A DNA stretch of 34,907 nt from Macrostomum lignano (GCA_002269645.1 NIVC01004796.1:1-34907); one strand, 5' to 3'. Numbered from the stretch's first letter, positions 9,617 through 34,550 are shown. A program made the numbers and translations. The notes: generated by a model not told the origin, from the letters alone.

Positions 9617-9685
9617 CTGTGGAGGAGGTTGAAGATCAAGCTCAAGTTCAGGTATATTTATTTCTAAATGCCAAGTTTTTTACAT

Positions 9686-10200: not shown

Positions 10201-10229
10201 ACTGTAAGTAGAAATGCTCGACTATTTAC

Positions 10230-15594: not shown

Positions 15595-18258
15595 TTTTGA
15601 ATTAGGCATTTACACCTGCACCAATGTTCTGAATTAGGCATTTTTAATTGCACCAATGTTCTGAATTAGGCATTTTTACTTGCACCAATGTTCTGAATTA
15701 GGCATTTACACCTGCACCAATGTTCTGAATTAGGCATTTACACCTGCACCAATGTTCTGAATTAGGCATTTACACCTGCACCAATGTTCTGAATTAGGCA
15801 TTTACACCTGCACCAATGTTCTGAATTAGGCATTTTTAATTGCACCAATGTTCTGAATTAGGCATTTACACCTGCACCAATGTTCTGAATTAGGCATTTT
15901 TAATTGCACCAATGTTCTGAATTAGGCATTTTTACTTGCACCAATGTTCTGAATTAGGCATTTACACCTGCACCAATGTTCTGAATTAGGCATTTACACC
16001 TGCACCAATGTTCTGAATTAGGCATTTACACCTGCACCAATGTTCTGAATTAGGCATTTACACTTGCATCAATGTTCTGAATTAGGCATTTACACCTGCA
16101 CCAATGTTCTGAATTAGGCATTTACACCTGCACCAATGTTCTGAATTAGGCATTTACACCTGCACCAATGTTCTGAATTAGGCATTTTCAATTGCACCAA
16201 TGTTCTGAATTAGGCATTTACACCTGCACCAATGTTCTGAATTAGGCATTTACACCTGCACCAATGTTCTGAATTAGGCATTTACACCTGCACCAATGTT
16301 CTGAATTAGGCATTTTCACTTGCACCAATGTTCTGAATTAGGCATTTACACCTGCACCAATGTTCTGAATTAGGCATTTACACCTGCACCAATGTTCTGA
16401 ATTAGGCATTTACACCTGCACCAATGTTCTGAATTAGGCATTTTTACTTGCACCAATGTTCTGAATTAGGCATTTACACCTGCACCAATGTTCTGAATTA
16501 GGCATTTACACCTGCACCAATGTTCTGAATTAGGCATTTACACCTGCACCAATGTTCTGAATTAGGCATTTACACCTGCACCAATGTTCTGAATTAGGCA
16601 TTTTCACTTGCACTAATGTTTTGAATTAGGCATTTAACTTGCACCAATGTTCTGAAGTAGACATTTTTACACCTGCACCAATGTTCTGAATTAGGCATTT
16701 ACACCTGCACCAATGTTCTGAATTAGGCATTTACACCTGCACCAATGTTCTGAATTAGGCATTTACACTTGCATCAATGTTCTGAATTAGGCATTTACAC
16801 CTGCACCAATGTTCTGAATTAGGCATTTACACCTGCACCAATGTTCTGAATTAGGCATTTACACCTGCACCAATGTTCTGAATTAGGCATTTTCAATTGC
16901 ACCAATGTTCTGAATTAGGCATTTACACCTGCACCAATGTTCTGAATTAGGCATTTACACTTGCACCAATGTTCTGAATTAGGCATTTTCACCTGCACCA
17001 ATGTTCTGAATTAGGCATTTTCACCTGCACCAATGTTCTGAATTAGGCATTTACACCTGCACCAATGTTCTGAATTAGGCATTTTCACTTGCACTAATGT
17101 TTTGAATTAGGCATTTACACCTGCACCAATGTTCTGAATTAGGCATTTACACCTGCACCAATGTTCTGAATTAGGCATTTTTACTTGCACCAATGTTCTG
17201 AAGTAGACATTTTTACACCTGCACCAATGTTCTGAATTAGGCATTTACACCTGCACCAATGTTCTGAAGTAGACATTTTTACACCTGCACCAATGTTCTG
17301 AATTAGGCATTTACACCTGCACCAATGTTCTGAATTAGGCATTTACACCTGCACCAATGTTCTGAATTAGGCATTTACACCTGCACCAATGTTCTGAATT
17401 AGGCATTTTTACTTGCACCAATGTTCTGAATTAGGCATTTACACCTGCACCAATGTTCTGAATTAGGCATTTTTACTTGCACCAATGTTCTGAATTAGGC
17501 ATTTACACCTGCACCAATGTTCTGAATTAGGCATTTTCACCTGCACCAATGTTCTGAATTAGGCATTTTTACTTGCACCAATGTTCTGAAGTAGACATTT
17601 TTACACCTGCACCAATGTTCTGAATTAGGCATTTACACCTGCACCAATGTTCTGAAGTAGACATTTTTACACCTGCACCAATGTTCTGAATTAGGCATTT
17701 ACACCTGCACCAATGTTCTGAATTAGGCATTTACACCTGCACCAATGTTCTGAATTAGGCATTTACACCTGCACCAATGTTCTGAATTAGGCATTTTTAC
17801 TTGCACCAATGTTCTGAATTAGGCATTTACACCTGCACCAATGTTCTGAATTAGGCATTTTTACTTGCACCAATGTTCTGAATTAGGCATTTACACCTGC
17901 ACCAATGTTCTGAATTAGGCATTTTCACTTGCACTAATGTTTTGAATTAGGCATTTACACCTGCACCAATGTTCTGAATTAGGCATTTTCACCTGCACCA
18001 ATGTTCTGAATTAGGCATTTTTACTTGCACCAATGTTCTGAATTAGGCATTTGCACTTGCACCAATGTTCTGAATTAGGCATTTACACCTGCACCAATGT
18101 TCTGAATTAGGCATTTACACCTGCACCAATGTTCTGAATTAGGCATTTTCACTTGCACCAATGTTCTGAATTAGGCATTTTTACTTGCACTAATGTTCTG
18201 AATTAGACATTTTTACACCTGCACCAATGTTCTGATTTAGGCATTTTTACACCTGCAC
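15595..18258. repeat. 32-bp satellite (gcaccaatgttctgaattaggcatttacacct), ~80 copies
   Basis: A constant ~26-nt core plus a 6-8-nt variable segment drawn from a few recurring variants. Internal duplications of ~705 bp and ~388 bp. Confidence 0.98.
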
Positions 18259-19702
18259 TGTTGCGCTCCAATTTCTGAATCATGTCGACAATCGACGGAT
18301 CGCTAATTGAAGCTTGCGTTTTTTCAGCCAAACTTTCTACGAAAGATTGCAGGCAGACTGCAGGCGGATGATACTTCACATTACGAGCTAATTACATAGT
18401 CTACTAATGTGACTAAACTCTGATTCGGTTTCGCATTACTCGTAGTTGGTTTATTTATAAAGATCGAATACTAAAGTCTTCAGAATACGATGAGAAAAGT
18501 GGCTATGGCAATTTTTGTAAAAAAAAGTTTTCTATAGTGTCCCCTGAAGTTCCAATCCATTTGTATTGACAATTTACAATTAAAGCATGCCTGTGAACAG
18601 GACGGTGATGTTGACAGGTTACATATACGCTCGTAGTTTTGAGAAAGTTGGCACTAATTTCAAAAGCAGAGGCGGCCTACGAAACGAGGATTTTCAACCA
18701 TTCGCCACCCTAAAAATACGATTATACGAGTCAGTTGGCGCGTTTACAGGACACGCGGGATATGCTACTAACAGTAGAGCACGTGTAAATGTGGCATTAA
18801 TTTAACTCACTCCTTAATTGTCTATCAAGAATCAAAGTAATGTTGCAAAGGAGGAGAGGCTGTGAGCGACACACTTAACTCGGCATTGCTTCAGTTCACC
18901 CAGCTGTAAAATGTGTACCAGCATTAGCTCGGGTAATTGAGGCTGTGTGGCGACCCCCCCGTTCTTGTCGCTGAGCTAATTGGAGCAGGTGTGATCAATT
19001 ATTATTAGTGTTGTTGTTGTTGAAGTCAAATGATTTCATAATTAAAACGAAAAGAAAAGAATGCAAAGTCTGAGTTATATGTATCAGGTTTTTATAGAAT
19101 TTTTGCTTAGCATTTTATTGAACGCCCAAGTGACGCAAAGCATGCTGGTTATATTTCTCTTAGAACAGAACACACGCCAGACTAATGCCTTCTCTCTGTA
19201 CAGTATCGGTGCCACTGATAAAATTAATTTAAACACATGTTTAATCAGATATAACCATATTTTATATGAACAATGAAAGGGACAACAGCGGCGCGAGCCG
19301 AACACAGACACGTTGGGGTCAGGGTGAGGGGAGCAGGACAAAAAACACAAAATAAACTATTCATAAACGCAGAAAATAAACAGGGTTTAAACACAAAACT
19401 ACAGTGGGCCGCTAACTGGGCCAGACGGTGCGAGGCTAATGGAAAACAAAAAAGCACACAAACCGAACCGATCAAAACAAGAATGGCGGATTTGGGGCGA
19501 GGATTAACCGGAAACACGACTGGAGGATTCGAGGAAGAATAAAACGGATCAAGCGAGCGGACGACTGATTGCAGGTCGGCGAACCGATTAGAAGCTGCGA
19601 CAAGCAAAAATATGAAATTCAAAGAGAGGTTCTGCGCGAACAGGAGATGAGAAAAATGAGAGAAAAAAAAGCCACGCTCGAATTCGATAAGCGGACTATC
19701 AA

Positions 19703-20515
19703 TCAATCACTGTTAATGTCCAACAGCGCGCTGAGGTCGTCGGAGTCCGGGGACGCCGCCGACGCCAGGCCGGGCATCAGGGGCGCGTCGGAGAAGACGC
19801 CGGACTCGCTAGACGGAGCGTCCGGACTGTCGCAGAGCAGCAGCGAGTCCAGCTGGTTGAGCGCCGACTGGTCGAACAGCAGGTCGCCGAGGCCGGCTAG
19901 GAGGTCGCCGCCATCAGCACCGGCGGGCTCGGCAGCGACAGGCCAGTCGACGTCTGGAACTGCAAAGGCCGGAGTGTCGAGGGTGCCAGCGCAGGCGGTT
20001 TCGGCGCCAGCGCCGGCGGCGGTGGCCAGGTGTCGGCCATCCAGGCCTGACACTTGCGCCGGCTGGCCAGAGTCGCCTGCAGTCGCCGCCGGAGCCGGTC
20101 GGCCGCCACGCGAGCTGCCGAGCGGCAGGAGGCGCCGGTGCTGGTTCTGGGACTGATTTTGCCGCTGTGTGCAGCCGGTCGAGCCAGCTGCAGCGCGAGC
20201 GCCAGCGTCATGAGAAGGCGCGCCAGACCCCGACCCTGCTGCTGAGGGTTGGCCACAGGCACTGCTGTCCTGTCTGCCGGGGTCGAGCGCGCGCCGCTCA
20301 GAGCTGAAACGCCCTGGCCGCAGCCGCCCTCCAGCTGTACAAGCAGGTGGTTCAGCCTGCTGCCCAGCTTTTCCAGCTTCTCCTTAAGCTCAGAGTTCTC
20401 GCAGCGCAAGTAGCGATTCTCAACCTCCAGTCGCTGCAACGCCGACTCCATCTTTTCCATTTTCTGCTTCTTCCGATCGCGAGCCTGCTGAGCCGCGATG
20501 CGGTTCATTACTTTC
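19703..20515 (-). CDS. XBP1: XBP1 exon 2, IRE1-spliced (XBP1s) reading: leucine zipper plus acidic C-terminal region after removing 20242-20264
   Basis: Acceptor tttccag|G AAA GTA ATG gives KVMNRIAAQQARDRKKQKMEKME. After the 23-nt deletion the new frame is open to TGA at 19703 (...DLLFDQSALNQLDSLLL...DDLSALLDINSD). The predicted protein is 466 aa. Confidence 0.88.
19897..20515 (-). CDS. XBP1: XBP1 exon 2, unspliced (XBP1u) reading
   Basis: The same exon read without splicing gives a hydrophobic HR2-like stretch GLARLLMTLALALQLA and a stop at 19897. The predicted protein is 409 aa. Confidence 0.85.
20242..20264 (-). other. XBP1: 23-nt unconventional (IRE1-type) intron
   Basis: Two stem-loops with 7-nt CNG|CNGN loops: ACAGGA-CAG|CAGT-GCCTGT and ACCCT-CAG|CAGC-AGGGT. 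The excised sequence is CAGTGCCTGTGGCCAACCCTCAG. Confidence 0.88.
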
Positions 20516-20663
20516 CTGGAAATTTGTTAACGAGAATAGAATAGAATTATTTACTATGACGTTTTGTTTGCAACAGACTACTTAAAGTAGACAAGTAAGT
20601 AGGATCGCAGGAATGACTTCCGGGTGAGTCTTAATTTACAACAGATTTAAATTCAAAGCTTAC

Positions 20664-21274
20664 CGTCGGGTCAGTTTCTCGTCAGCGGTCAGGTGGTTGA
20701 GCCGAGCCCGCTTCCGGCCGTAGATTGACGAGCCGAGCAGGTCGTCGTCATCCTCGAACTCGTCGAAGGACAAAGTCGAGTAGGTCGACGAATCTAGTGG
20801 GGCCTTCTGCAGAACCAGATTCTCCGATTCGGTGCGAATCTTCGAGTCTGCAGCAGCCACTGACGAAGACGACGATGTTGAAGTCGACAGGGCCGGGGAC
20901 AAAGCCGACGCCGGATTTGTCGAGCCGAGGACGATGCGCGCAGGCTGGGCGTCCTCCATGTCGAGCAGGCGCGGCTCCTGCATCATCTTGCGCTTGCGAA
21001 AGTGCTGCTGCGAGCTGTCGGCTGGGCTAATGATCTTAGTCCCGCTGCCGCCGCCGCCGACAAAACAAGTCGACGCGGGAGGCGCGGCCGACTCCGAAAC
21101 ATCGACGAAGTCGGCCGACGCGTCGGCTCGCTTGAACAGCTGCTGCTGTTGTTGTTGGGTCAGCGCCAGCTTACCGTTGCCGCCAGGGACTTCAACCAGA
21201 CACATCTGCGGCCCGGCGATGCCCGCCTTCTGCAGCAGGGCGTACACGACTTTCGATGACGCGTTGATAGTCAT
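20664..21274 (-). CDS. XBP1: XBP1 coding exon 1
   Basis: First in-frame ATG at 21274. Ends RKRARLNHLTADEKLTR(R), compared with XBP1 RKRQRLTHLSPEEKALRR. Phase-2 donor CG|gtaagc, with a 148-nt intron at 20516-20663. Confidence 0.88.
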
Positions 21275-21482
21275 CTCTGCGTTACAAAGCGAAGCAGGAT
21301 GTGTTATGTTCTTCTGATGCAAGAGATTGATGATGAAATATTTAAGACTGGGAGAGTTGTCTAACCCATTACAAAGCCATGCGGCGATGCTTATATAGGA
21401 TGATCAGTACCAAAGGTAATCGGTCAATTCAGTCCAAGATTGTATGACGAAACTACCTCAGAAAAAACCGCTTGAGAAACTT

Positions 21483-21490
21483 CCACGTCA
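21483..21490 (-). promoter_or_regulatory. UPRE-like element TGACGTGG
   Basis: Exact TGACGTGG on the XBP1 sense strand, just downstream of a TATA-like tatttaaa (21502-21509). Confidence 0.55.
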
Positions 21491-21527
21491 GCAGTCCGTT
21501 GTTTAAATAAGGCTGACTGTAACGCGT

Positions 21528-21546
21528 CGTGGCGTTTTCCTATTGG
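21528..21546 (-). promoter_or_regulatory. ERSE-I element CCAAT-N9-CCACG upstream of XBP1
   Basis: CCAAT-aggaaaacg-CCACG is an exact match with 9-nt spacing, ~20 bp upstream of the TATA-like motif. GC boxes lie at ~21766 and ~21798. Confidence 0.75.
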
Positions 21547-22985
21547 TCCGCGACCCGGTAGAACGCCAGAGCAAGAGAGCATGAATTGCAATGTTGGAAC
21601 ACGGGGCAATGCTGTACATTTATACGCCTGTACATTTCGATACGCACGCCCACTATGAAGCACGTGACCCATTGCGGGACAGGATTGTACAGTGATCCCA
21701 GTCTATTTTTAGAAATCACGCAGGGGCTGAGTGATGTTACTGTTCAAAAAACCCGTCCTATCCACCCGCCCCCTCTTACTGCCAGCGTGGAGGCAAACCC
21801 GCCCCCTCCCCGGTTCCAAACTGCGATTCCAGCGTGGAACTTTGGGCATTGGGTGGGGCTGCCGGCTGTGCCTTGTGTTTAAACTCTAGCGAAATGCTGT
21901 TTCTCGTAATTTCAGCTGTTTACTAAGGCACGTTGCCATAATAAGACGGCCAGCGCCCCCCACCCCTACGAGGGTGAGAGAGGCGGAAAGAGCGGGGAGA
22001 GGCAGCCCGCCGAACCCGTAGCAGCCAAAGCTCACGCCCGGCATGACTAGGCAAAAAAGCACTGCCGATCAATAGGCGATAGTAAACGACGGTTTACACT
22101 GAGTAGTTGGATATTCAATATTCTCTCCAAAAGGGATCAGATACTCGATAGTTCCCAGCTAAGCTAAGCCAATCAGTAACTGCAGAAATAGAAACGAAGA
22201 GGAAAGAAAGGCCAAACCGGAGTTCTTAAATAAGAGTTGTTCTGACAATGTTCAGCCGACTGTAATTCACTTGCATTACAAGCCTTCCAGCTGGCAATTC
22301 GAACATAATGAATTGAAAACTGAAATCTGTACAACTTACAGATTTGATACAAAACATGGCATATCAGTACAAAACATGAAATGAACAGGCAAATAGAAAA
22401 GACAAAGAAGTACTCCGCAGCAAAACCATCAATTGAAGCCTAAAGTTAAAAAAATTAACTCTTTTATGCATAAATTTTGAAGAGCAAAAATTCAAAATTT
22501 TTGCCGTTTTTTATTTAGTGCTGCAATAACAGAAATTGTTTTCAGACTAGCACGAAACTGGAAAACGATGACAAATTATTAATGAATGATAAATTGATGA
22601 AGAATAATTGAAATATGAAGCAATCAACGCACTCGAGGTTGTGAAAGAGAATAGTTTTGAGTAGCAACCAACACATTTGGACACAACAATCATAGCAAGA
22701 CAGAACAACAGAAAAAGCATCATTGTGAATCGATATTTGTTAGTGAGCCTTTGCAGTGCAGACTGCAGTACTATAAATATCCAAAACAATGGGAAGCAAA
22801 CCAATGCAAATAAAAGCTAATAATATTATGAAGAAATAAAACAATGCCTACTAACAGTAGTTGGTAGGTAAGTACCGCATTAACCGAGTGTCACTAAATA
22901 TGATAAATAAAGATGAATCAATATAAAATTCTCAAACTAACAATAGAACTCAATTTGATAAAATGTCTGCTCACTAGCGCTCTGC

Positions 22986-23653
22986 TCACTGCAGAGCCGG
23001 CCCGCCGTGTCCAGAGGCTGAGGGCCGGCCGGTCCTGCAGTACACTGAGCCCTTGCTGCGCATATACTTGCTAATATAAGACTTCGCCTTGCCCTGCACA
23101 TTGGCGTTCACCTCCAGGTCTTCAATATGGCGCGTGTGCTTCAGCTCCTTCAGCAGGATTGCGTGAGTCATCTTCTTGACTAAGTACTTCAAGTCCTCTT
23201 GATTGGTGATGCGGCCAGTCTGGCAGGTGGCGGCGCAGTAGCGCTGCAGGTGCGCGTGGACGAACTCCTTCATCGAGGCGGTGAAGGCAGCCTTCTGCTG
23301 CAGCTCGCGCGAGCTGGCCACCTCGCGGCGCCTCTGTTCAACTTTTTCAACGCGCTCCCGGCGCCGGATTTTCACGGCGTTCCGGGTGATCATGTCCTGG
23401 ATCTCGTCGTGGGACACCTGGAAGCGCCAGGCTCCGTTGTACTCGAAGGCAGCCTCGGAGGCGGCCGCCGATGGCTCCGCAGCGGTCTCTTCGGGCAGGG
23501 CGTCCCACGGATAGGTGGGCTCCCAGGAGTGCTCGCTACCCGGCTGGTCGCGCCACACAGTCCGCCTGGTGCCCAGATGGTAAAAGTACACACGGCCGTC
23601 CGGATCGCGGGCCGAGCGCCATTGCGGCGGCAGGCCGCCCGAAGCTGCGACGG
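22986..23653 (-). CDS. SETD2: SETD2-like gene, last exon: WW and SRI domains
   Basis: Acceptor tcattttgcag|CC, phase 1. WW motif LPPQWRSARDPDGRVYFYHLGTRRTVW. SRI motif GRITNQEDLKYLVKKMTHAILLKELKH..EDLEVNANVQGKAKSYISKYM. Confidence 0.9.
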
Positions 23654-23762
23654 CTGCAAAATGAAATGCAAATACAATGCGAAAATTATACTACTTACTG
23701 CCGTGAGTAGACAGGCACAAAAAACATGAAAACTCGATGATCCGATAAAAAAACTGGCTCAC

Positions 23763-24555
23763 CCGCATCGCCTCGCTGCGTGACAGCCAGCAGTAGTCGG
23801 TGCACATTCGGATCAGCCGCAGCCGCATCGGCGAGATCCTCCTGGCTGACGCAGCCGGCCATAGCGGCGGATCTGGCATGGAAGCCGCCGCCGCCGCTGC
23901 CGCCTCGCAGTAGCATTGCCTCGAGCACGCGGCACAGGATGGCGTGCACCCCGCCGGACGAGCCGGCGAGGGCGGCCGCCTGCAGCTGCTTTCTATCGGG
24001 CTCCGTCATGCCTGCGTACGCCTCGAACAGCCGGTCGAATTCCTCGGCCGCCGCGCAACTGTCCGCCGTCGGCTGCGGCGTCGTCGAAGTCAAAGCCAAG
24101 GAAGCATCGGGAGCGGCTGCTTGGGTTGATGCTGTTGAAGACGCGGTCGCTGCCGCGCCGGAACCGGGAGCCGCTGTTTCGTTCGGCAGACGGTCCCAGC
24201 GGGCCAGCAGCTCGGCAGCCAGCTGACCGACTGCATCCCGGTCCCCAGACAGACGGCGGAGCAACTGCTGCAGGCTGTCAGCCACAGAGGCTCGGGCCAA
24301 CTGATCAGCCGATGCCAGCGGCACGCGGGCCATCGTACGCAGAGCTGCCAAGACCAGCTGAGTGTTCGGCGAGGATGACGAATTCGAGCAGCAGTTGGGC
24401 GCTGCCTCGGTCAGGCAGGCGGCGGTCAGTTGCAGCCCGTGGTGCCGCCGAAGAGTCAGTAGGCAGTCGGCGACAGCGGGGCCTGCAGCATCGGCCAGCA
24501 GCTGTAGCAGTCGGGTCCTGGCTTCGATCGGCAAATCTCGCTGGTGCAGCAGGGC
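23763..24555 (-). CDS. SETD2: SETD2-like gene, post-SET helical (AID-like) exon
   Basis: RTRLLQLL...LRRHHGLQL...LRTMARVP...AAELLARWDRL matches the Set2 post-SET helical region. Donor G|gtgagc at 23762, phase 1. The acceptor position is uncertain (24534-24587); a phase-0 site at 24555 is assumed. Confidence 0.75.
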
Positions 24556-24764
24556 CTTCAACAGCAATTCACGATAGCATGGGTTAGCTAGTTAGTTCGG
24601 AAATAGGGCTGTCTGTGGACGCTGCCGCAAATCATGGCAAGAGGTCAGTCCGCTAATCCCTGAGCACACACCCACACGGATACATACACAGGGTCAACAG
24701 CTGTACTGACTTTCTAATCAATTTGGGCTCAGACAACAGCAACACAGTTCATGAGCCAACTCAC

Positions 24765-26159
24765 CCTGAGCAAGCTTATCACTTCATTAGGCTGCGTCAC
24801 AGTCTCAAGCGTCAGCAGCTGGCTAGCATCGTGGCCAAAGTCGAGCGTCATTGAAGGCTTGCCGCAGCAGCTGCAGCGCGTCTCGGCCCCGACTGCGGCT
24901 GGCCAAGACAGAAACCGGCAGTCGATGACCAACTCCTCACCTCTGGCGATGTCGCGCCTAGCGAACAGGCCCAGCCGACGCTGGCCGCCGGTTACCCACA
25001 CCTGCGCTTCGGTGTTCGCCTCAACTCCGGCGCTGCCGCTGCAGCTGACAAATCTGGCCAGGTTGCCATTCGCAGTGGCATCAGCCACCAGACTGGCTCC
25101 CATCGGCATAAAGTACAGCCGCTTGCCAGCCGCCTTGTCCGCTGCACGACGCTGCCAAAACTCGCTCCAGTCGACCAGTTCGCCGGCGAATTCAATTAGA
25201 AAAGCGCCGGCGCCAACAGACGAGGTGGCGCGGACGCCCCAGTCGCGTCTGGCGCCCAGATACAGAGGCTCAAGCGGCAGGGCCGATGGCGGCAAGTCGA
25301 AGCGCCGATTTGTGCACATCTCGCCGCACGGACAGCGCCTGTTGTCGCATTCGACGCGCAGGGCTCGGTTGACGCAATCGGAGCCGCAGGCCTCGGCGCC
25401 TCTGGCTGCCTGGTCGGGCGTTGGCACGCTGCAATCGCAGGGCCAGCCGCAAGCCGGCTCAGTCGGGAGAAATTTTGCTAGCGGAACGCTTCGTTGCAGC
25501 AGCTCGTAGCTCGGCGGCGACATGCCCGGCGGCGCGGCCGGTTCGAGCGGCTCTAGGGCGGCCGCTGCAGCAGCCCGCTTAGCTGCGGCCTCAGCGGCGG
25601 CGGACGAATCCAGGGTGTCGTCGTGCGGCTCCTCCGGCTCGGCGACGTCCGAGGAGAGGCAGCCGGCCAGGAGGGACTGCCGGTCCTGTTCGTCCAGCTC
25701 GACCTCGTTGATGCTACGATCGCTGGCGCCGCCGCCGCCATCGCCGCGCATCGGCGAGGTAGACGAAGCCACCGACATGTCGCTGCTGCATCCGCCGCCA
25801 GCGGTATCGTCCGGCCTCGGCGCGGGCGGCGGTCGGCCCGGCGGAGTTGTCGGCACAACAGAGACGGCGGCAGTTGTGGGGCCGGAGTCGGAGGCACGCA
25901 GGCGGGACAGCTCCCGCTGCTGCATGGCCACCTGGCTCTGCATCTGCTTGGTGAAGTTAGTCAGCATGCCGAAGAAGTCTGTCAGTTGTTTGAAAGCGGC
26001 GTTGGCATCGGCGGAGCTGCCGGTTTTACTAGCGGGCTTACCGCCGACAGCTGCGCCGACTGTAGCCGCCACCGGCTGCTGCTTCGGCTGGTCAACCCGG
26101 ACCGGGGCCGCCTTTGACTCCTGGGGTGGGTAACAGTTCGGGATTGCTAGCTGGATGAG
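24765..26159 (-). CDS. SETD2: SETD2-like gene, AWS plus degenerate SET exon
   Basis: AWS motif CDC...CGSDCVNRALRVECDNRRCPCGEMCTNRRF. SET motifs WGVRA, IEFAGE, YFM, DAT.NGNLARF, RLGLFARRDIARGEELVID. Donor AGG|gtgagt. The acceptor could be 26159, 26129 or 26290. Confidence 0.85.
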
Positions 26160-26891
26160 CTGGGGCATGGCTTGTTAGCGATGGATTATTGGGCATCATC
26201 ATCCCCATGGTCATCATCATGATCAAAGTGGTCCCCATCAGCAGCTGGACATGTTGGCGAGTGAGCAGCTCCAGCTGCTCTATTTGGTTGCTGCAAAAGT
26301 GAAATGCAACGAGGCGGCGGGATGCAATGGTAGAACGTTTTTAATTAATGTTGACTAAACCAAATCCACGGGAACGCGCATTCACCATACTACTAATACT
26401 AAGTAGATTGAAATCCTTAGAGCTCTCATGACTAGAATATCTGGAAAACTTCAAACAACCCAGTTGCTTAAATAGAAACCCGCCTATTAAATAGGGAAGC
26501 CCCAGAACCCAACTGAAACCTTAATAGAGGCCTGGCAAATTAATAAAACAATGAGAAAAATATAAATTATTAATAGATCGCTCGGCAGTGTAAAAACAAA
26601 CTTATTGAAGCTTATTCGACGACGACCAACGGGATGGGGGGGGGGTAGTAGAGAGGAAACTGACGGGGTTGCTACGAATGCGACAAGCGGTTGTTTTGCA
26701 TTATTAATAAATATATTCGAGCTAAGCATATGCTATATAGTATTAGCAAGTTTGCCAGGTGCGAGAACGTTTGGAAGGGGGGGGCACACAAAATTCAAAG
26801 ACGAAGGAAAACCGGGGGGCGGCGGTCATGCAAATTCAGCAGTTCAGGCCGCAGGCAGGGCGGAATGCGCGGTACGCCGCCGGTCACCCAC

Positions 26892-29865
26892 CTGGCGCGT
26901 GGCGTGCAGGCGGTCGCCAGAGGCGCCAGCGTCGCCGTTACCGCTTCTGACTGCGCTACCGTCGTCTCCCGTATCGCCTCCGCCGCTGCGCTGCCGCTGG
27001 ATCATGGCGTCGACTTGGCGCAGCCGCTCCTTCACCTTCTGTCTCTCCAGGTGGCGCCGCTCGCGCTCTTCGGCTTTGCTGGCCGCGGAGGTCTCGTCGG
27101 CGGAGGGTTCAGCGGCCGAAGCTCGCTTGCTCTGGTGGTGCTGTCTGGACCGAGAGCCCGATCGGCTGCGGCGCTGACGGCTGCGACTGCGCTGCCGCTG
27201 ATTCTGCTGACGGTGACCGCCGCCTCCGCCTGGCGCAGCTCCGCTAACGCCGCCGCCACCGCCCCCTCCGCCTGCCGACCCGTCAGAGTCACCGGGGCTT
27301 CGCCGGCGTCGATGCCGCTGGGATCGATCTCGACGGCCGCTAGAGCTATCAGCCTCGCCGCTGCTAGCCGACCGGCTGTCGTCGTCATCGCGCCGGTGAC
27401 GCCGCTTTGACCGGCTTTTGCCGTGCCGATTCCGACCATTGTCGTCTCTTCGGCGACTGCCGCTATTGCTGTCGCCGTGTCGACGGTGCCGGTCCTTCTC
27501 GTGCTTCCCTTCCTTACCCCGATCGCCGTCTTCTTTGGCGTCTCGGCTGTTGCCTCGCGACCGATGTCGATGGCGCGACTGAGTCGGCGGCGTTGGGGAC
27601 CGTCGTCGTCGGCGCTCCTCCCGATGTCGCTCGCCGCTTTGGTCATTGGGCGATCGCTCTCTGACCCGGTCCTTAGATCGCTCCGATGAGCGCCGGCTCT
27701 CCGTTGCCTCCTGGGCGGTTGGGGCCGATCGCGAGGCCAGGCGGTCCTTCGAGAGGCTCCGGCGCAGCTGGGACTGCGGCCTTCGATCGTCTTCTCTCTG
27801 CGGCGCTTCTACAGGCTCCACCGCCGCAGACTTGGATTCGGCGGCCTTTGTTTCCTTCGACTTTTCATCGCCAGCTTTATCAGCTTCTTCACAACCGTCG
27901 TCATCGTCGTCCTCGCCGAACTCGGCTAGCGTCGACTTAAGCTGCCCTTTAGACGCAGAAGTGTTCCTTCTTTGAGTTGCGTTGGCGCCGCTTCCGGTGG
28001 CTGGCGCACCGGAGTCGCCGCCGGAGAAGCTCATGTGCACTTTCTCGCGAACCTCTGGCAGCTCACGCAGCTCAGTGCCAGCAGCCACGGCCGCGGCGCC
28101 GCGATTGTCAGCGTCGCTAAGCCCCATCTCGGTGTCAGTCAGCTGCTGCGGCTCCTCGTCCGACAGGGTCTCGTAGGAGCTTCCGCCAGACTCTCTGCGC
28201 CCGCCGCCGGGTTTGGCCGCGCCGCCGTCTCCGTTGTTTTTGCTCGCTTCGGCTGTTGAACGCCGACGCTCGCCGCCGTGATGTCTCTTCGGCGAGGCTC
28301 CCGGCGACGAGGCACGATGCGACCGGCGCGGAGACGACGAAGACTTTCGGTGCCTGCTGTGCCGATGGCGCCGGCTGTCTGGGGAGCGTGAGCCGCGCCT
28401 CCGCTTGCGGTGCCTGTGCCGGTGCCCGTGCGAGCCACTGGAGCGGCGACGGCGCCGGCTTCCTCCTCCTTCACCTCCTCCGTCGTCCTCGCCGGGATCG
28501 CGCTGCACATAGCCGTCGTCGCGCTGGTGCATCATGAGCAGTTCGCGTTCTCGCGAAGATCGCAACCGATCGGCCTCCTGGCGGGTCATCAGAGCGCCGG
28601 GAATGGGCGGCAGCGCGGCCGGATTCAGGTGCGACACGTCTGGCAGTGGCGGCGCCTCGGCTGCCTGCTTGGCGGCCAGCAGCAGGTTCGGCCGGTTATG
28701 CTTCGGCTTGCCCTGGGCTGATGGTTTCAAGCTTGGCAGGCCGAGGTTTGAAAGGGCACTGGAACCGCTGAGGCTGGAGATGCCGCCAAGACTGGACAGC
28801 CCGCCGACACCACCAAGGCCAGAGAGTCCGCTGAGGCCACCGACACCGCTTAGGCTGGCGAGGCCGCCAGAGCCAAGCGAGGACACGCCTCCAATGCTGC
28901 TGCTCATGAGGCTGGTTATGCCGCCAGCTGCGCTGGACTCGGTGACAACGGAACTACCGGATCTGTTTCCACTGTCAGCGCGGGTGCGACTACCGCTTGC
29001 AGATCCAGTCAGGGCGGCTCCTGAAGATGAGGCCGCCGTGGTGCTGGGCACCGAGGAGCCGCCAGATCCGGACTCGAACGGTTGGATTGGCGTCTTCTCG
29101 ATGTCGGCCGCGTTAGGTAGGAAAAGCTCTGCGCGTCGGTTGCCGATGGGCGCGGCGCCTCCACCGCCGCTGCCACCGCCGGCCTGTCCGGCATTGCTAG
29201 CTGGGCCGCTGTCCGATTCTGGCAGTTTCTTTCTTTTAGCCGGCAAAACGCCAGTCTGCAAGGTTAGCGGCTTCCGTTTGCCCGGTCCGGCCGGTGCTTG
29301 GACCGGCATTGGCTGCTTCCACTGCTGCTGTTGTTGCTGCTGCTGCTGCTGGGTGGGCGAAGTGGCACTCTGCTGCCCACCAGACTGCTGCTGCATTGAA
29401 GCAACCACAATTGACGGCTGCTGAGACGGTTGCTGCTGGGAGTAGGGCACAGCGGAGCCGCTCTTGGCGTAGCTGATCATGCCGAATGCGCTTTTCAATG
29501 CGAATTTCACCGGCCCGCTGCTGGCCGAATGGTGAGAGCCGGCGGACAGGTGCGACAAATCCGGCGGTGGAGGGGCCGCGGTGTGCTCCAGCGCCGGCAG
29601 CTGGTCCGGCAGGGGAATGTCGGCCACATTGCCAAAGTCCTTGTCGCCGTCGAAGTCGTCGTCAATGTCGGATCGGCTGGATGACGGCGGCGGCGACTTG
29701 CGGAGGTTTCGGGCCGGCGGCCGAGGCGGCGATGACGAAGGCGGCGGCGGTGGAGGCGGCGGCGGCGGCGGAGGGGGTGGCGGGGGAGGCGGCGGAGGCG
29801 GAGGGGGCGGCGGCGGCGCGGCTCTATTGACAGCCTGCACTGGCATCGGAATCTCGTCCAGCTCA
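26892..29865 (-). CDS. SETD2: SETD2-like gene, large low-complexity exon (poly-Pro, poly-Gln, Arg/Ser-rich)
   Basis: ~1000-codon ORF with acceptor ttttcag|T (phase 2) and donor CAG|gtgggt (phase 0). Linkage to the SET exon is inferred from splice phase and strand. Confidence 0.78.
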
Positions 29866-30029
29866 CTGAAAAGTTATTTGTTGATTGTTATTAATGTGGA
29901 AAATAAATTTCGCAACCATGGCTGCAATCATGGACCACTGAAACACATCTGGACTATTCAGTCTGAGTCTGCTCCAGTCCAGATAATAGTTTCAGTGATG
30001 CATGGTATCTGATGGAACAGCAAACTCAC

Positions 30030-30058
30030 TCGGTTGGAAAAGCGGGGTCGTACTCCAT
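30030..30058 (-). CDS. SETD2: SETD2-like gene, first coding exon (MEYDPAFPTD)
   Basis: ATG at 30058. The phase-2 donor GA|gtgagt fits the next acceptor. An upstream acceptor cttattgcag lies at 30151. Confidence 0.7.
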
Positions 30059-30342
30059 AGCTGTTGAAGCTATTCAAGCTTTGACGTCAGATTAGATAAT
30101 ATTTGGCCAGACAGTGTCCGGGTCACAGCATAGCAACTCCGGTCGGTCTGCTGCAATAAGAAATTTGGATTTTAGAAATTGTCCGTTTCAAAGAGCACTT
30201 AATTATATAATGACTGAAATACTAGCTTTTATGTCAGCATGATAGGATATACACAATTTATAGTTTAAAAGACTCCAGCGAGACAGGTCTGCTGAGCTTA
30301 GGCGAGATAGCACTACTGCGTTCACGTTACAACTGATAAGAC

Positions 30343-31315
30343 TAATGGACACAGGTGAGGTGGGACTAATGGACACAGGTGAGGTGGGACTAATGGGCAC
30401 ACAGGTGAGATGGGACTAATGGACAGGTGATGGAACTAATGGGCACAGGTAAGATGGGACCAATGGGCACAGGTAAGATGGGACTAATGGGCACAGGTAA
30501 GATGGACTAATGGGCACAGATAGATGGGACTACTGGGCTCAGATGAGATGGGACTACTGGGCTCAGATGAGATGAACAACAGGGCTCAGATGAGATGGGA
30601 CTACTGGGCTCAGATGAGATGGGACTAATGGGCTCAGATGAGATGGGACTACTGGGCTCAGATGAGATGGGACTACTGGGCTCAGATGAGATGAACAACA
30701 GGGCTCAGATGAGATGGGACTACTGGGCTCAGATGAGATGGGACTACTGGGCTCAGATGAGATGGGACTAATGGGCTCAGATGAGATGGGACTACTGGGC
30801 TCAGATGAGATGGGACTACTGGGCTCAGATGAGATGGGACTACTGGGCTCAGATGAGATGGGACTACTGGGCTCAGATGAGATGGGACTACTGGGCTCAG
30901 GTGAGATGGGACTACTGGGCTCAGATGAGATGGGACTACTGGGCTCAGATGAGATGGGACTACTGGGCTCAGGTGAGATGGGACTACTGGGCTCAGATGA
31001 GATGGGACTACTGGGCTCAGATGAGATGGGACTACTGGGCTCAGGTGAGATGGGACTACTAAGCTCAGATGAGATGGGACTACTGGGCTCAGATGAGATG
31101 GGACTACTGGGCTCAGGTGAGATGGGACTACTAAGCTCAGATGAGATGGGACTACTGGGCTCAGGTGAGATGGGACTACTGGGCTCAGGTGAGATGGGAC
31201 TAATGGGCTCAGATGAGATGGGACTAATGGGCTCAGATGAGATGGGACTAATGGGCTCAGATGAGATGGGACTAATGGGCTCAGGTGAGATGGCACTGCT
31301 GGGCACAGATGAGCT
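30343..31315. repeat. 24-bp minisatellite (gggctcagatgagatgggactact) between RRN3 and the SETD2-like gene
   Basis: Homogeneous 24-mers at ~30525-31290, with degenerate units at the left end. Confidence 0.97.
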
Positions 31316-31430
31316 AGGACCTACAAAAGCAAAACGACAAGAGACTTGAAATCGGTCAAGACTGCCAAAAACAATATTGAATGCAAGCATACGGTATGCA
31401 TTCACTTGCGTTCAATATTCAGTGCAGGAT

Positions 31431-31617: not shown

Positions 31618-32323
31618 TCAGGCCGATTCGCCAAACACAACGCAGTCGCTGCGTAGGCGTTTTCTCCGCCTGGCGAACAGCTGGCCCGGGCCCTGCAGCG
31701 CCTCGGCCAGCAGCGGCTGCGCAGGCGGCTCCGCTAAAATCGGCTGAGCCGGCGGCTGCGACTGGGGCTGCTTCGACGGCTGCTGCTGCGTCTCAACCGT
31801 CTCATTGGATGCCGTCGGCGGCGTTGGTGGCGGCGACGGCAGCGGCTCGTCCAGCAGAAGCAGCGGCCGGAGCAGCGGCTCGCAAAGGCCGAGACCCTCC
31901 AGAGAGGCGGACAGCGGCTCCTCGGCGGCGGGGGCCAGTGCTGTGGCCGACGCCGGGTCCAGGGTAGTCCGGCGCCGCTTCTTGTGCTTCTTCTTGGCGG
32001 ACAACGGCGCAGTAGCAGTGGCGGCGTCGGCAGCCTCGCAGCCGTCTGACAGGCTGGCTATGGCGCTAATGAAGTCGTCAAGGCTGTAGCGCCGGCACAG
32101 CAGGGCAAAGCGGGACCGAAGCTGCTGCGGCAGGGCGGGCCAAGGCTGCAGCGAGGACAGCAGCACGAGGTGGAAGTGCATGCCAGAGAGGCAGGCTCCG
32201 TCCTTGCCGGCTCCGTCTAGCAGCTCTCGGTGCCGGTGGACGGCAATGCGCACGACGGCCCGGACGCAGGCGTGGAACAGGCTGGCCTCGTCCGCGCCTA
32301 GCGTGCCGGCCCGCTTGTTGTAT
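31618..32323 (-). CDS. RRN3: RRN3/TIF-IA (RNA polymerase I initiation factor), last exon
   Basis: Acceptor ctctccccag|A, phase 2. LFHACVRAVVRIAVHRHRELL...HFHLVLLSSLQPW...RFALLCRRYSL parallels RRN3 FYSACQAVFYTFVFRHKQLL...NFERIVMSQLNPL...FAAITNKYQL. Basic NLS-like tail. Confidence 0.8.
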
Positions 32324-32384
32324 CTGGGGAGAGAGGGGCGTGGATTGGGAGCTGGGTGAGTGTTTTGAATTTTAAAACTAGTGC

Positions 32385-32818
32385 TTTTACAATTATGACT
32401 AGTGCTGTTGGAATCGCGACTCGTGCTGTTGGAATCGGGACTCGTGCTGTTGGAATCGCGACTCGTGCTGTTGGAATCGGGACTCGTGCTGCTGGAATCG
32501 GGATCGTGCTGCTGAAATCGGGACTAGTGCTGCTGGAATGGGGACTAGTGCTGTTGGAATCGGGACTAGTGCTGTTGGAATCGGGACTAGTGCTGTTGGA
32601 ATCGGGACTAGTGCTGTTGGAATCGAGACTAGTGCTGCTGGAATGGGGACTAGTGCTGCTGTAATGGGACTAGTGCTGTTGGAATCGGGACTAGTGCTGT
32701 TGGAATCGGGACTAGTGCTGTTTGAATCGAGACTAGTGCTGCTGGAATGGGGACTAGTGCTGCTGTAATGGGGACTAGTGCTGTTGGAATCGGGACTAGT
32801 GCTGTTGGAATCGGGACT
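32385..32818. repeat. 21-bp minisatellite (ctagtgctgttggaatcggga) filling an RRN3 intron
   Basis: About 20 tandem copies within intron 32324-32835. Confidence 0.95.
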
Positions 32819-32835
32819 CTGTAATCAGCACTCAC

Positions 32836-33403
32836 TTGGAAGCCATCAGCCTGGCGCGGTCAACCAGCAACAGCAGTACGGTGTGCAGCAGATGCTGGTG
32901 CACAAAGGCGCACCTGGCGCACAGGTCGCCAAGCAAAGAGAGGCAGCGCAATCGAAAATTGGCGCCAAGATGCGAATCAATAGCGCGCTTCCACAGGTAG
33001 TCCAGGAAGCCGTGAGCAATCCGATCATTTGCTGAGCAGGCCAGCGCCAGCAGCAGGTGCAGTCGGGACGGTCCAGCCAGATGGGCCAACTCCCTGTCGA
33101 ACACGGTCAGCAAGTCCTTGTACACAGCCTTGGTGCGCGGCCAGTCGCTGGGGTCCAGCTCGGCTCGCACGTAGCACAGCAGCGGATGAAGGCAGGCGTT
33201 GAGCTTCAGCCGCTGGTCGCAGGCGCGGCAACTGGCACCGCCAGCGGCAGGAGACGCGAGCAGCAACAGGCTGTGCAGCTCCGGGGTCAGCTTCCACCAG
33301 GTGTCAGTAGTTGCTGACGACTGACGACTGGCGAGACAGGCGGCTGACGCTTCGGCTGCGGCGGCCGATTGAGCGCAGGTGCAACGAGCCACCGAAGCGG
33401 TGC
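32836..33403 (-). CDS. RRN3: RRN3 internal exon
   Basis: TKAVYKDLLTVFDRELAHLAGPSRLHLLLALACS...FLDYLWKR...LCARCAFV parallels RRN3 TKDLYRDLINIFDKLLLPTHASCHVQFFMFYLCS...FLEHLWKK...LARAKFI. Acceptor actttcag|GC (phase 1) and donor AA|gtgagt (phase 2). Confidence 0.85.
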
Positions 33404-33570
33404 CTGAAAGTGCCCAGATTTGTACCAATAAACCCTGAAGGACTGAAAAACTGACTACTAGCAAGTCAGTAGCAAGATAAGAATTTGAAGTGAAGCATAT
33501 TGCTTATATAGAGAGTGCAAAATAGGGTTTCAACCAAACTTTTAAAAAGTATATTTTGTTAGCATCTTAC

Positions 33571-33896: not shown

Positions 33897-34550
33897 TAGG
33901 ATAGAGACACACTGAAGGACTCAAAAGGAAGGGATAGAGGCACACTGAAGGACCTAGAAGGGAAAGGATAGGGGCACATTGAAGGACATAGAATAAAAAG
34001 GATAGGGGAACACTGAAGGACCTAGAAGGGAAAGGATAGGGGCACATTGAAGGACATAGAATAAAAAGGATAGGGGAACACTGAAGGACCTAGAAGGGAA
34101 AGGATAGGGGCACTTTGAAGGACATAGAAGGAAAAGGATAGGGGCACATTGAAGGACATAGAAGGAAAAGGATAGGGGCACATTGAAGGACATAGAAGGG
34201 AAAGGATAGAGGCACATTGAAGGACATAGAAGGAAAAGGATAGGGGCACATTGAAGGACATAGAAGGAAAAGGATAGGGGCACATTGAAGGACATAGAAG
34301 GAAAAGGATAGGGGCACATTGAAGGACATAGAAGGAAAAGGATAGGGGCACATTGAAGGACATAGAAGGAAAAGGATAGGGGCACATTGAAGGACATAGA
34401 AGGAAAAGGATAGGGACACATTGAAGGACATAGAAGGAAAAGGATAGGGGCACATTGAAGGACATAGAAGGAAATAATATATTAGAAGGATAGGGGCACA
34501 TTGAAGGATACAGAAAGGACAGGATGGAGGCACAAAGGAAAGGATAGAGG
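33897..34550. repeat. 34-bp minisatellite (gaaggacatagaaggaaaaggataggggcacatt) in an RRN3 intron
   Basis: Purine-rich tandem array. It explains the MCPYPFPSMSF-type spurious ORFs. Confidence 0.95.

What the first reader, a model, noticed from the sequence alone, without database searches (positions are those of the whole stretch)
24860..25440. SETD2/Set2 homolog with a apparently dead SET domain but intact AWS, WW and SRI: a candidate pseudo-methyltransferase scaffold
Seen in sequence: every key catalytic element is substituted. The SAM-binding KGWG reads RDWG. EYCGE reads EFAGE. RFMNHSCEPN reads RFVSCSGSAGVEAN, so the NH and the zinc-binding Cys are lost. ELTFDY reads ELVIDC, replacing the catalytic Tyr with Cys. 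The post-SET CxCx4C reads CSCCGKPS, losing the last ligand. All AWS cysteines, the WW domain and the Pol II CTD-binding SRI domain are well conserved and the exons are open. Established knowledge: the NH motif, terminal Tyr and post-SET zinc site are required for SET activity. Inference: this is a protein under selection that rides elongating Pol II without writing H3K36me3, possibly a dominant-negative or scaffolding paralog.
Basis: partly seen in the sequence, partly recalled or inferred. Interest (0 to 1): 0.82.

Follow-up and report, generated by a model that had tools for sequence, protein, structure and literature searches.

The report
Flatworm SETD2 gene with dead-looking catalytic site
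The flatworm Macrostomum lignano has an expressed SETD2-type gene that keeps the parts that dock onto RNA polymerase II but has lost nearly every residue a SET enzyme needs to methylate histone H3, so it is probably a non-enzymatic scaffold; whether the worm also has a working copy could not be checked.

Summary
On the minus strand, 24852-25442 encodes the AWS-SET-post-SET module of a SETD2/Set2-family protein. The gene is Macrostomum lignano PAA52569.1 (954 aa, RNA-seq-derived model), followed by a helical middle region, a WW domain and an SRI domain.

Human SETD2 is the best solved match (2e-34). KGWG reads RDWG, HYYF reads RLYF, RFMNHSCEPN reads RFVSCSGSAGVEAN, ELTFDY reads ELVIDC, and the third post-SET cysteine is missing.

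Of 52 columns at least 90% conserved in 145 other SETD2-like representatives, 37 are kept, including all seven AWS cysteines. Fifteen are changed, mostly at cofactor, lysine-channel and post-SET zinc positions. No other of 272 SETD2-like domains loses more than one motif.

The frame has 0 stops in 954 codons. The same substitutions appear in three independent sequence versions. WW and SRI match human SETD2 well.

Best reading: an expressed, catalytically inactive SETD2 that still binds elongating Pol II.

Not settled:
- Purifying selection on the dead domain. No other Macrostomum sequences were reachable, and the two copies are too similar for dN/dS.
- Whether a canonical SETD2 paralog exists. 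None was seen, but absence is not shown.
- Actual loss of activity.

The parts
24765..26168 (-). First coding exon of the 954-aa model, from ATG at 26168. It holds a low-complexity N-terminal part, then AWS, SET and the degenerate post-SET. The donor is AGG|GTGAGT after 24765.
   Evidence: Splice sites read. The spliced translation is identical to PAA52569.1 (P0001) except A952T.
25299..25442 (-). AWS domain (protein residues 243-290). All seven conserved zinc-cluster cysteines are present.
   Evidence: Pfam AWS 5.7e-11. C1499, C1501, C1516, C1520, C1529, C1533 and C1539 equivalents are kept. AlphaFold pLDDT is 86-90.
24918..25274 (-). SET domain core (residues 299-417). The fold is retained but the catalytic motifs are substituted.
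   Evidence: Pfam SET 2.1e-11. Human SETD2 2e-34. The model matches SETD2 structures at TM 0.76, rmsd about 2 A.
25236..25247 (-). RDWG in place of KGWG. The invariant Gly of the GxG SAM-binding motif (human G1561) is Asp.
   Evidence: 0 of 145 other representatives have anything but Gly here.
25179..25193 (-). EFAGE in place of EYCGE/EYVGE (human Y1579 to Phe). This is a mild change.
   Evidence: Three otherwise canonical representatives also have Phe here.
25107..25124 (-). KRLYFM in place of (N)IHYYFM. H1603 becomes Arg and Y1604 becomes Leu. Y1605 and M1607 are kept.
25014..25055 (-). RFVSCSGSAGVEAN in place of RF(M/I/V)NHSCEPN. The NH motif is lost and there is a net 4-residue insertion. 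The zinc-ligand Cys is lost or displaced.
   Evidence: There is a local pLDDT dip to 74.
24918..24935 (-). ELVIDC in place of ELTFDY. The catalytic Tyr (human Y1666) is Cys.
   Evidence: 0 of 145 other representatives lack Tyr here.
24852..24878 (-). RCSCCGKPS, the degenerate post-SET. The C1678 and/or C1685 equivalents are lost, and the third Cys of CxCx4C is absent.
   Evidence: Post-SET pLDDT is 38-69.
24556..24764 (-). Intron 1 (GT...AG).
23763..24555 (-). Middle exon. Its start continues a helical region (residues about 451-516) that aligns with the conserved post-SET helical region of other SETD2 proteins.
   Evidence: Alignment A1 has invariant L254, R269, L273, L288, G296 and L297. Weak phmmer hits to other SETD2 proteins. 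No Pfam family.
23654..23762 (-). Intron 2 (phase 1).
22986..23653 (-). Last coding exon, holding WW and SRI. The stop codon TGA is at 22986-22988.
23541..23636 (-). WW domain (residues 739-770).
   Evidence: Pfam WW 1e-8. Human SETD2 WW structure 2mdi at 5.2e-8. Alignment.
23049..23291 (-). SRI (Set2-Rpb1 interacting) domain (residues 854-934).
   Evidence: Pfam SRI 4.7e-15. Human SETD2 SRI structure 2a7o at 5.6e-19. Alignment.
26847..29846 (-). 1000-codon ORF rich in Pro, Ser and Arg. It is probably the N-terminal disordered part of the same SETD2 locus. GenBank annotates it as a separate 652-aa gene, probably the first gene of the same transcriptional unit. A phase-0 donor CAG|GTGGGT at about 26892 could join in frame to the acceptor CCCCAG|GAG at about 26123.
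   Evidence: ORF. Two collinear short matches to the N-terminus of Mesocestoides SETD2 are individually not significant (E 0.46 and 0.70). Gene calls. Belonging to the same protein is inferred, not shown.

Best explanation
The locus is the Macrostomum lignano member of the SETD2/Set2 family. Its order is a disordered RS/Pro-rich N-terminus, then AWS, SET, a vestigial post-SET, a helical middle region, WW and SRI. It is transcribed and correctly spliced.

The SET domain keeps its fold and its AWS zinc cluster. It has lost the residues that bind S-adenosylmethionine and complete the lysine channel:
- the GxG Gly is Asp;
- the NH motif is gone;
- the catalytic Tyr is Cys;
- H1603 is Arg;
- at least two of the four post-SET zinc ligands are gone.

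The most likely working model is a pseudo-methyltransferase. The SRI domain docks on the phosphorylated CTD of elongating RNA polymerase II. The WW domain binds proline-rich partners. The protein then acts as an adaptor in the elongation complex without writing H3K36me3.

Shown: sequence, domain architecture, motif loss, uniqueness of that loss, open frames, and a transcript-based gene model.
Inferred: loss of SAM binding and activity, Pol II binding, and the scaffold role.
Unresolved: whether this is the only SETD2-type gene of the species or a diverged duplicate.
For: Identity and architecture:
- Pfam finds AWS, SET, WW and SRI.
- The full protein scores 2.6e-57 against human SETD2. The SRI scores 5.6e-19 against 2a7o and the WW 5.2e-8 against 2mdi.
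- The closest library relatives are flatworm SETD2 proteins from Taenia, Mesocestoides, Cichlidogyrus, Schistosoma and Paragonimus.

Motif loss:
- It is seen in alignments to human SETD2 and to 149 representatives.
- 15 of 52 highly conserved columns are changed. Eleven of these carry a residue seen in none of 145 others.
- The changes concentrate in catalytic, cofactor and post-SET zinc positions. The counts are 10 of 19 against 5 of 33 (p = 0.006), or 9 of 11 against 6 of 41 for a strict ligand list (p = 6e-5).
- Among 272 SETD2-like domains only this protein loses more than one motif.

Fold kept:
- All seven AWS cysteines and 37 of 52 conserved positions are retained.
- The AlphaFold model has mean pLDDT 83.5, with the SET core at 86-96. 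It matches SETD2 structures at TM 0.76.

Domain-specific divergence:
- SET mean identity is 0.367, the lowest of 55 SETD2 proteins. The next lowest is 0.465.
- SRI identity is 0.336. That lies in the range of fast-evolving lineages, whose SET identity is 0.47-0.55.

A live gene:
- There are 0 stops in 954 codons, against 11-28 in the other five frames and a minimum of 10 in 2000 Markov simulations. GC3 is 0.76 and intron GC is 0.45.
- The GenBank model equals my splice prediction. That annotation is built only from RNA-seq transcripts (PMC5730564).
- The same substitutions appear in three sequence versions.

Precedents:
- MLL5 lacks the XGXG, Y and NH motifs. It binds no SAM and has no activity (PMC5094779).
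- Mouse SETD2 has a catalysis-independent role in PAF1C-Pol II association (PMC13187324).
Against: - No biochemical data exist. Inactivity is inferred from motifs.
- No orthologs from other Macrostomum species were reachable, so purifying selection on the degenerate SET domain is not demonstrated.
- The two genomic copies differ too little to help: 5 of 5778 exon bases, with introns equally conserved.
- The SET-domain tree puts the protein on a very long branch (0.75). It groups with flatworm SETD2 in only 26 of 300 bootstraps. Orthology therefore rests on architecture and best hits, not on phylogeny.
- By my recollection of SETD2-H3 structures, the post-SET substrate-binding loop is also altered (QFQRY becomes RFLSW plus an insertion). 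A histone-tail-binding role for the dead domain is therefore not supported either.
- The list of 'active-site' positions used in the enrichment test came from my knowledge of SET-domain structures. It was not drawn blind.
Confidence: 0.6

Rival explanations
1. It is a diverged duplicate. M. lignano also carries a canonical, active SETD2 elsewhere in its highly duplicated genome. This copy has been freed to lose catalysis, by sub- or neo-functionalisation and possibly as a competitor for the Pol II CTD. This rival concerns whether the gene is the sole ortholog. It is compatible with the gene being a pseudo-enzyme.
For: The Mlig_3_7 assembly is highly redundant, and the karyotype shows duplication (PMC5730564). 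The very long SET branch is typical of a released duplicate. H3K36me3 by SETD2 is almost universal in animals (general knowledge).
Against: - Among the 150 best representatives of an exhaustive HMMER search (all at least 110 bits, the range where canonical SETD2 proteins fall) no second M. lignano protein was recognised. Both M. lignano proteomes are in that collection.
- About 30 representatives were named. All Ala/Gly/Arg/Pro-rich ones were checked and are algae, ticks, a tardigrade or unnamed environmental contigs.
- This is weak evidence only. The library is clustered at 50% identity, and most representatives carry no name.
Confidence: 0.3
2. It is a transcribed but functionless, decaying gene. 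The SET changes are early neutral decay, and the rest has not yet accumulated disabling mutations.
For: The SET domain is the most divergent of 55 SETD2 proteins and sits on a branch of 0.75. No cross-species constraint could be shown. GenBank splits the locus into two gene models.
Against: - There are 0 stops in 954 codons, and the 1000-codon upstream ORF is also open. The other frames carry 11-28 stops.
- Both introns have consensus splice sites, and these are used in the transcript-based model.
- WW and SRI match human SETD2 at 5e-8 and 6e-19. The WW+SRI region also scores better against non-flatworm SETD2 (about 1e-25) than against parasitic-flatworm SETD2 (about 1e-12 or weaker).
- All seven AWS cysteines and most structural Gly and hydrophobic positions survive, while 15 invariant positions changed. 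That selective pattern is not expected from neutral decay deep enough to replace 29% of the near-invariant sites.
Confidence: 0.12
3. It is still an active lysine methyltransferase with an unconventional active site, possibly with a changed substrate or product state.
For: The fold, R1625/F1626, Y1605, M1607, D1665 and C1680 equivalents are kept. Single deviations are tolerated elsewhere: H to S in an algal group, and Y1579F in some animals.
Against: Five independent hallmark elements are lost together: GxG, N, H, the catalytic Tyr, and post-SET zinc ligands. This occurs in no other of 272 domains. The comparable losses in MLL5 abolish SAM binding and activity (PMC5094779). An Asp in place of the GxG Gly should disturb the cofactor pocket (inference).
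Confidence: 0.07

Closest known systems
SETD2 / Set2 / HYPB (H3K36 trimethyltransferase that travels with elongating RNA polymerase II)
   Same: The domain order AWS-SET-(post-SET)-helical region-WW-SRI is the same. Human SETD2 is the best solved match for the SET module, the WW and the SRI. The long disordered N-terminus resembles that of other flatworm SETD2 proteins. The nearest library relatives are flatworm SETD2 proteins.
   Different: The GxG Gly, the NH motif, the catalytic Tyr, H1603 and two to three post-SET zinc ligands are replaced. There is a 4-residue insertion next to the former NH motif. The SET domain is the most divergent of 55 SETD2 proteins.
MLL5 (KMT2E) / SETD5 / UpSET / yeast Set3-Set4, and C. 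elegans SET-24: SET-domain proteins without catalytic activity
   Same: A SET fold is kept while the XGXG, NH and Tyr elements are replaced. These proteins act through other domains as chromatin adaptors (PMC5094779; the PMC12886896 abstract).
   Different: It is a different SET subfamily. There is no PHD finger and no similarity beyond the SET fold. Here the targeting modules are WW and SRI, aimed at Pol II. Inactivity is shown experimentally for MLL5 but only inferred here.
Catalysis-independent function of mammalian SETD2 (support of PAF1C association with elongating Pol II)
   Same: It shows that a SETD2 protein can carry a biologically important role that needs the protein and its SRI-mediated Pol II contact but not methyl transfer (PMC13187324).
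   Different: In mammals the same protein is also the active enzyme. The inactive form there is an engineered point mutant. Here the inactive state would be the natural one.

Membership tests
SETD2/Set2 family | AWS-SET-post-SET module most similar to SETD2 rather than to NSD, ASH1L or other SET subfamilies | tested here: met
   phmmer against the PDB gives SETD2 at 2e-34 (122 bits), ASH1L at 1.7e-28 and NSD at about 1e-22. The best library hits are annotated SETD2 proteins.
SETD2/Set2 family | C-terminal SRI (Set2-Rpb1 interacting) domain | tested here: met
   Pfam SRI 4.7e-15. Human SETD2 SRI structure 2a7o at 5.6e-19.
SETD2/Set2 family | WW domain upstream of SRI (metazoan SETD2) | tested here: met
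   Pfam WW 1e-8. Human SETD2 WW structure 2mdi at 5.2e-8. Alignment.
SETD2/Set2 family | Intact catalytic signature: GxG, NH(S)C, ELxFDY Tyr and post-SET CxCx4C | tested here: not met
   The motifs read RDWG, RFVSCSGSAGVEAN, ELVIDC and CSCCGKPS.
SETD2/Set2 family | Orthology shown by phylogeny (groups with flatworm or animal SETD2) | tested here: inconclusive
   In a neighbour-joining tree of the SET region the terminal branch is 0.75 and is attracted to the outgroups. The flatworm grouping appears in 26 of 300 bootstraps.
SETD2/Set2 family | H3K36 methyltransferase activity | not testable with these tools
   Needs an in vitro assay on nucleosomes, or H3K36me3 measurement after knock-down.
SETD2/Set2 family | Binding of the Ser2/Ser5-phosphorylated Pol II CTD by SRI | not testable with these tools
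   Sequence only. The positions I recall as CTD-contacting in human SRI (F2505, K2506, R2510, H2514) read L, K, K, H here (alignment; numbering from memory).
Pseudo-methyltransferase SET proteins (functional class; MLL5 as type case) | SET fold retained while cofactor-binding XGXG and NH and the active-site Tyr are replaced | tested here: met
   Fold. Replacements. MLL5 criteria: PMC5094779.
Pseudo-methyltransferase SET proteins (functional class; MLL5 as type case) | No SAM binding and no methyltransferase activity | not testable with these tools
   Needs ITC or thermal shift, plus a methyltransferase assay.
Pseudo-methyltransferase SET proteins (functional class; MLL5 as type case) | Degenerate domain conserved among orthologs (purifying selection) | not testable with these tools
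   No other Macrostomum sequences were reachable. The word-index protein search returned only proteins shorter than about 580 aa. The two genomic copies are 99.9% identical in the exons.
MLL5/SETD5 subfamily (by descent) | Homology to KMT2E/SETD5, with a PHD finger next to SET | tested here: not met
   There is no PHD hit in Pfam. All best matches are SETD2, ASH1L or NSD.

The most novel reading that the evidence does not exclude
Macrostomum lignano has no catalytically competent SETD2. Its only Set2/SETD2 ortholog is a natural pseudo-enzyme that still rides Pol II. Co-transcriptional H3K36me3 in this animal would then be absent or written by another enzyme. This species keeps DNMT1 and DNMT3. 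The conserved, selected function of SETD2 here would be its non-catalytic role in the elongation complex.
Probability: 0.3. Interest if true: 0.85.

Novelty: new variant of a known kind. Interest (0 to 1): 0.62.

Why it matters
SETD2 is treated as the universal writer of co-transcriptional H3K36me3 in animals. Separating its enzymatic role from its structural role normally needs engineered point mutants.

A natural SETD2 that has kept its Pol II-docking modules but lost its active site would be an evolutionary separation-of-function allele. It occurs in a transgenesis-capable, regenerating model animal. It would allow direct tests of what SETD2 does on polymerase II without methylation.

If it is the only copy, it also raises the question of how H3K36me3-dependent processes are handled in this lineage. 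Those processes include DNMT3 targeting, splicing and suppression of cryptic initiation.

If a canonical copy exists, the gene is still a clear example of a chromatin writer turning into a pseudo-enzyme.

Tried and rejected
1. Word-index protein searches.
- The SET exon and the WW/SRI exon found nothing.
- A mixed profile of this protein plus canonical SETD2 proteins returned only proteins shorter than about 580 aa and no Macrostomum entry.
- This tool therefore could not answer the paralog question or the other-species question.

2. dN/dS between the window and the Mlig_3_7 contig.
- There were 5 exon differences: 2 non-synonymous, 2 synonymous, and 1 in the SET exon that leaves the protein unchanged. 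There were 2 differences in 1078 intron bases.
- This gives no power.

3. Exact-protein look-ups.
- The unspliced 479-aa ORF is not on record.

4. Neighbour-joining tree of the SET region.
- Long-branch attraction made it uninformative for orthology.
- An earlier Biopython version timed out.

5. First AlphaFold run, with a 9-sequence alignment.
- Mean pLDDT was 52.9, so it was discarded and repeated with 35 sequences.

6. Literature and supplements.
- I searched for Mlig017137 or SETD2 in M. lignano papers. Nothing was found.

7. Alternative splicing rescue of the post-SET.
- I considered whether an alternative donor after CSCCG could restore a canonical post-SET. It was rejected because there is no GT nearby and the transcript-based model uses the donor at 24765.

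8. Sequencing or assembly error.
- Rejected because three sequence versions agree.

Full report
**What is there.** The window is eukaryotic genomic DNA with GC-rich exons and AT-richer introns. Between 22986 and 26168 on the minus strand lie three coding exons. I delimited them from consensus splice sites: donor AGG|GTGAGT after 24765, acceptor TTGAAG|GCC before 24555, donor G|GTGAGC after 23763, and acceptor TTTTGCAG|CC before 23653.

The spliced product of 954 aa is identical, except A952T, to GenBank PAA52569.1 (BOX15_Mlig017137g2) of the free-living flatworm Macrostomum lignano. Pfam finds AWS (5.7e-11) and SET (2.1e-11) in the first exon. It finds WW (1e-8) and SRI (4.7e-15) in the last exon.

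Against solved structures the full protein matches human SETD2 at 2.6e-57. Its SRI matches the SETD2 SRI structure 2a7o at 5.6e-19. Its WW matches the SETD2 WW structure 2mdi at 5.2e-8.

In the alignment to human SETD2 and to 149 library representatives the motifs read as follows:
- KGWG is RDWG.
- EY(C/V)GE is EFAGE.
- HYYF is RLYF.
- RF(M/I/V)NHSCEPN is RFVSCSGSAGVEAN.
- ELTFDY is ELVIDC.
- The post-SET CxCx4C is CSCCGKPS.

I took the 52 alignment columns that are at least 90% conserved in 145 other SETD2-like representatives. The flatworm protein keeps 37 of them. These include all seven AWS cysteines, R1625, F1626, Y1605, M1607, D1665 and C1680 (human numbering).

It changes 15: K1560R, G1561D, Y1579F, H1603R, I1615A, N1628S, H1629C, C1631V, P1633A, K1639V, V1642T, Y1666C, C1678S, C1685M and G1687L. 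Eleven of these carry a residue seen in none of the 145 others.

One caveat concerns C1631. A less parsimonious alignment, with NH deleted and a six-residue insertion, would keep a Cys there. NH is lost in either case.

**The changes are not spread evenly.** I used a list of cofactor, lysine-channel and post-SET zinc positions drawn from my knowledge of SET-domain structures. The list was not drawn blind.
- With the broad list, 10 of 19 such conserved positions are changed, against 5 of 33 others (Fisher p = 0.006).
- With a strict ligand list, the counts are 9 of 11 against 6 of 41 (p = 6e-5).

An AlphaFold model built on a 35-sequence alignment is confident for AWS and the SET core (pLDDT 86-96). 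It dips at the insertion (74) and is poor for the post-SET (38-69). It superposes on SETD2 crystal structures at TM 0.76 and about 2 A. The fold therefore looks kept, while the active site and the post-SET zinc site look lost.

**It is a live gene, not an artefact.**
- The coding frame has no stop in 954 codons. The other five frames have 11-28. In 2000 first-order Markov simulations the mean is 22 and the minimum 10. GC3 is 0.76 and intron GC is 0.45.
- The GenBank annotation of the Mlig_3_7 assembly was built only from RNA-seq transcript assemblies. These were cut at experimentally mapped trans-splice and poly(A) sites (PMC5730564). A model with exactly my splice junctions therefore implies transcription and splicing.
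- The same degenerate motifs are present in three sequence versions. These are the window, contig NIVC01003215.1 (97.7% identical over 12.5 kb), and the UniProt/WormBase protein A0A1I8HAG4, which differs by local indels.

**The divergence is domain-specific.** Among 55 SETD2 proteins that have both domains, this one has the lowest mean SET identity. It scores 0.367; the next lowest is 0.465. Its SRI identity (0.336) lies within the range of fast-evolving lineages (0.28-0.39), and those lineages have SET identities of 0.47-0.55.

The WW-SRI region scores better against non-flatworm SETD2 proteins (about 1e-25) than against parasitic flatworm SETD2 proteins (1e-12 or weaker). The alignment shows a WW and an SRI close to the vertebrate sequences. 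The start of the middle exon also aligns with the helical region that follows the post-SET in other SETD2 proteins.

**What could not be shown.**
- Selection on the dead domain. The two genomic copies differ at 5 of 5778 exon bases and 2 of 1078 intron bases, so dN/dS has no power. No orthologs from other Macrostomum species could be reached.
- Orthology by tree. The SET domain sits on a branch of 0.75 substitutions per site. It is pulled to the outgroups and joins the flatworms in only 26 of 300 bootstraps.
- Sole copy or duplicate. In the exhaustive representative search, the 150 best hits (all at least 110 bits, the range of canonical SETD2 proteins) contain no recognisable second M. lignano protein. 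About 30 were named, and all Ala/Gly/Arg/Pro-rich ones were checked. The library is clustered at 50% identity and mostly unnamed, so absence is not established.
- Inactivity itself is an inference.

**Mechanism proposed.** The protein most likely cannot bind SAM or complete the lysine channel. MLL5 is the documented precedent: replacement of XGXG, Tyr and NH abolishes SAM binding and activity there (PMC5094779).

With WW and SRI intact, the protein should still be recruited to the phosphorylated CTD of elongating Pol II. There it would act as an adaptor. A catalysis-independent role of mouse SETD2 in keeping PAF1C on elongating Pol II has been reported (PMC13187324).

By my recollection of SETD2-H3 complexes, the substrate-binding loop after the catalytic Tyr is also altered. 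I therefore do not propose that the dead domain still reads the H3 tail.

The 1000-codon RS/Pro-rich ORF upstream (26847-29846) probably belongs to the same locus. It has two collinear short matches to the N-terminus of a tapeworm SETD2. A phase-compatible donor-acceptor pair exists. GenBank calls it a separate 652-aa gene. Under that annotation's naming scheme, 'g2' is the second gene within one transcriptional unit.

**Comparison and novelty.** By descent and architecture this is a SETD2/Set2-family member that fails the family's catalytic-signature test. By function it resembles the inactive SET proteins (MLL5/SETD5/UpSET/Set3, SET-24) without belonging to their subfamily.

I found no paper describing this gene, or any naturally inactive SETD2 ortholog. 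I rate it a new variant of a known kind.

My estimates:
- About 0.6 that it is an expressed, retained, catalytically dead SETD2-type protein.
- About 0.3 that a canonical paralog exists as well.
- About 0.12 that it is merely decaying.
- About 0.07 that it is still an enzyme.

Noticed in passing
window 19900-21403, minus strand: The next gene downstream is a bZIP transcription factor (Pfam bZIP_2 8.9e-8, bZIP_1 2e-7). Its basic region reads like XBP1 to me. The UniProt/WormBase model A0A1I8HAG4 (P0151, 1394 aa) fuses this gene to the SETD2-like gene, which looks like an annotation artefact.
   Followed up: partly
window 31621-33503, minus strand; L001 1-3637: The upstream neighbour is an RRN3 (RNA polymerase I initiation factor) gene. 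Pfam RRN3 scores 5.1e-6 on one exon, and RRN3 is listed for the gene call in the Mlig_3_7 contig.
   Followed up: partly
window 26847-29846, minus strand (about 29730-29830 for the tract): The N-terminal ORF starts with a run of about 33 prolines. It also contains long Arg/Ser/His-rich stretches. A poly-Pro tract could be a ligand for the protein's own WW domain, as I recall being described for human SETD2. GenBank annotates only 652 aa of this 1000-codon ORF as a separate gene.
   Followed up: partly
window 26122-26300, minus strand: There are two candidate acceptors upstream of the SET exon. TTTTGCAG|CAACC (about 26291) fits the published trans-splice acceptor motif [T/C]TNCAG. CCCCAG|GAG (about 26123) is in frame with the upstream ORF's donor, and protein P0151 begins at this point. 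The M. lignano spliced leader ends in ATG (PMC8629364). The locus may therefore yield both a long cis-spliced mRNA and a shorter trans-spliced mRNA.
   Followed up: no
window 7578-8794, 10744-11086, 11926-12792, 13372-14506, 15025-15387, 15594-18258, 30340-31320, 32397-32818, 33898-34474: The window holds many long tandem-repeat arrays (periods 8-35 bp, up to 83 copies). Together they make up roughly a quarter of the window. The 24-bp array at 30340-31320 differs in copy number between the window and the Mlig_3_7 contig. This fits the reported 15% tandem-repeat content of the genome.
   Followed up: partly
window 9050-10634, minus strand: There is a two-exon gene for an FkbM-type methyltransferase (Pfam Methyltransf_21 2.8e-7). 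The intervening stretch (9735-10221) carries open frames rich in Lys, Glu and Arg with no Pfam match. It may be a transposon remnant inside the intron.
   Followed up: no
window 18871-31324 compared with L001 (NIVC01003215.1): The window is not the GenBank locus but a 97.7% identical copy. Divergence is about 1.2% in the flanking intergenic DNA but only about 0.1-0.2% across the whole SETD2-like gene, introns included. It may be an allele, a recent duplicate, or the result of gene conversion.
   Followed up: partly
window 2000-4000 and 4689-5414: A GC-rich block (up to 61% GC) has several 110-160-codon open frames on the minus strand and no Pfam hits. A 242-codon open frame at 4689-5414 also has no Pfam hit. 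Neither was identified.
   Followed up: no
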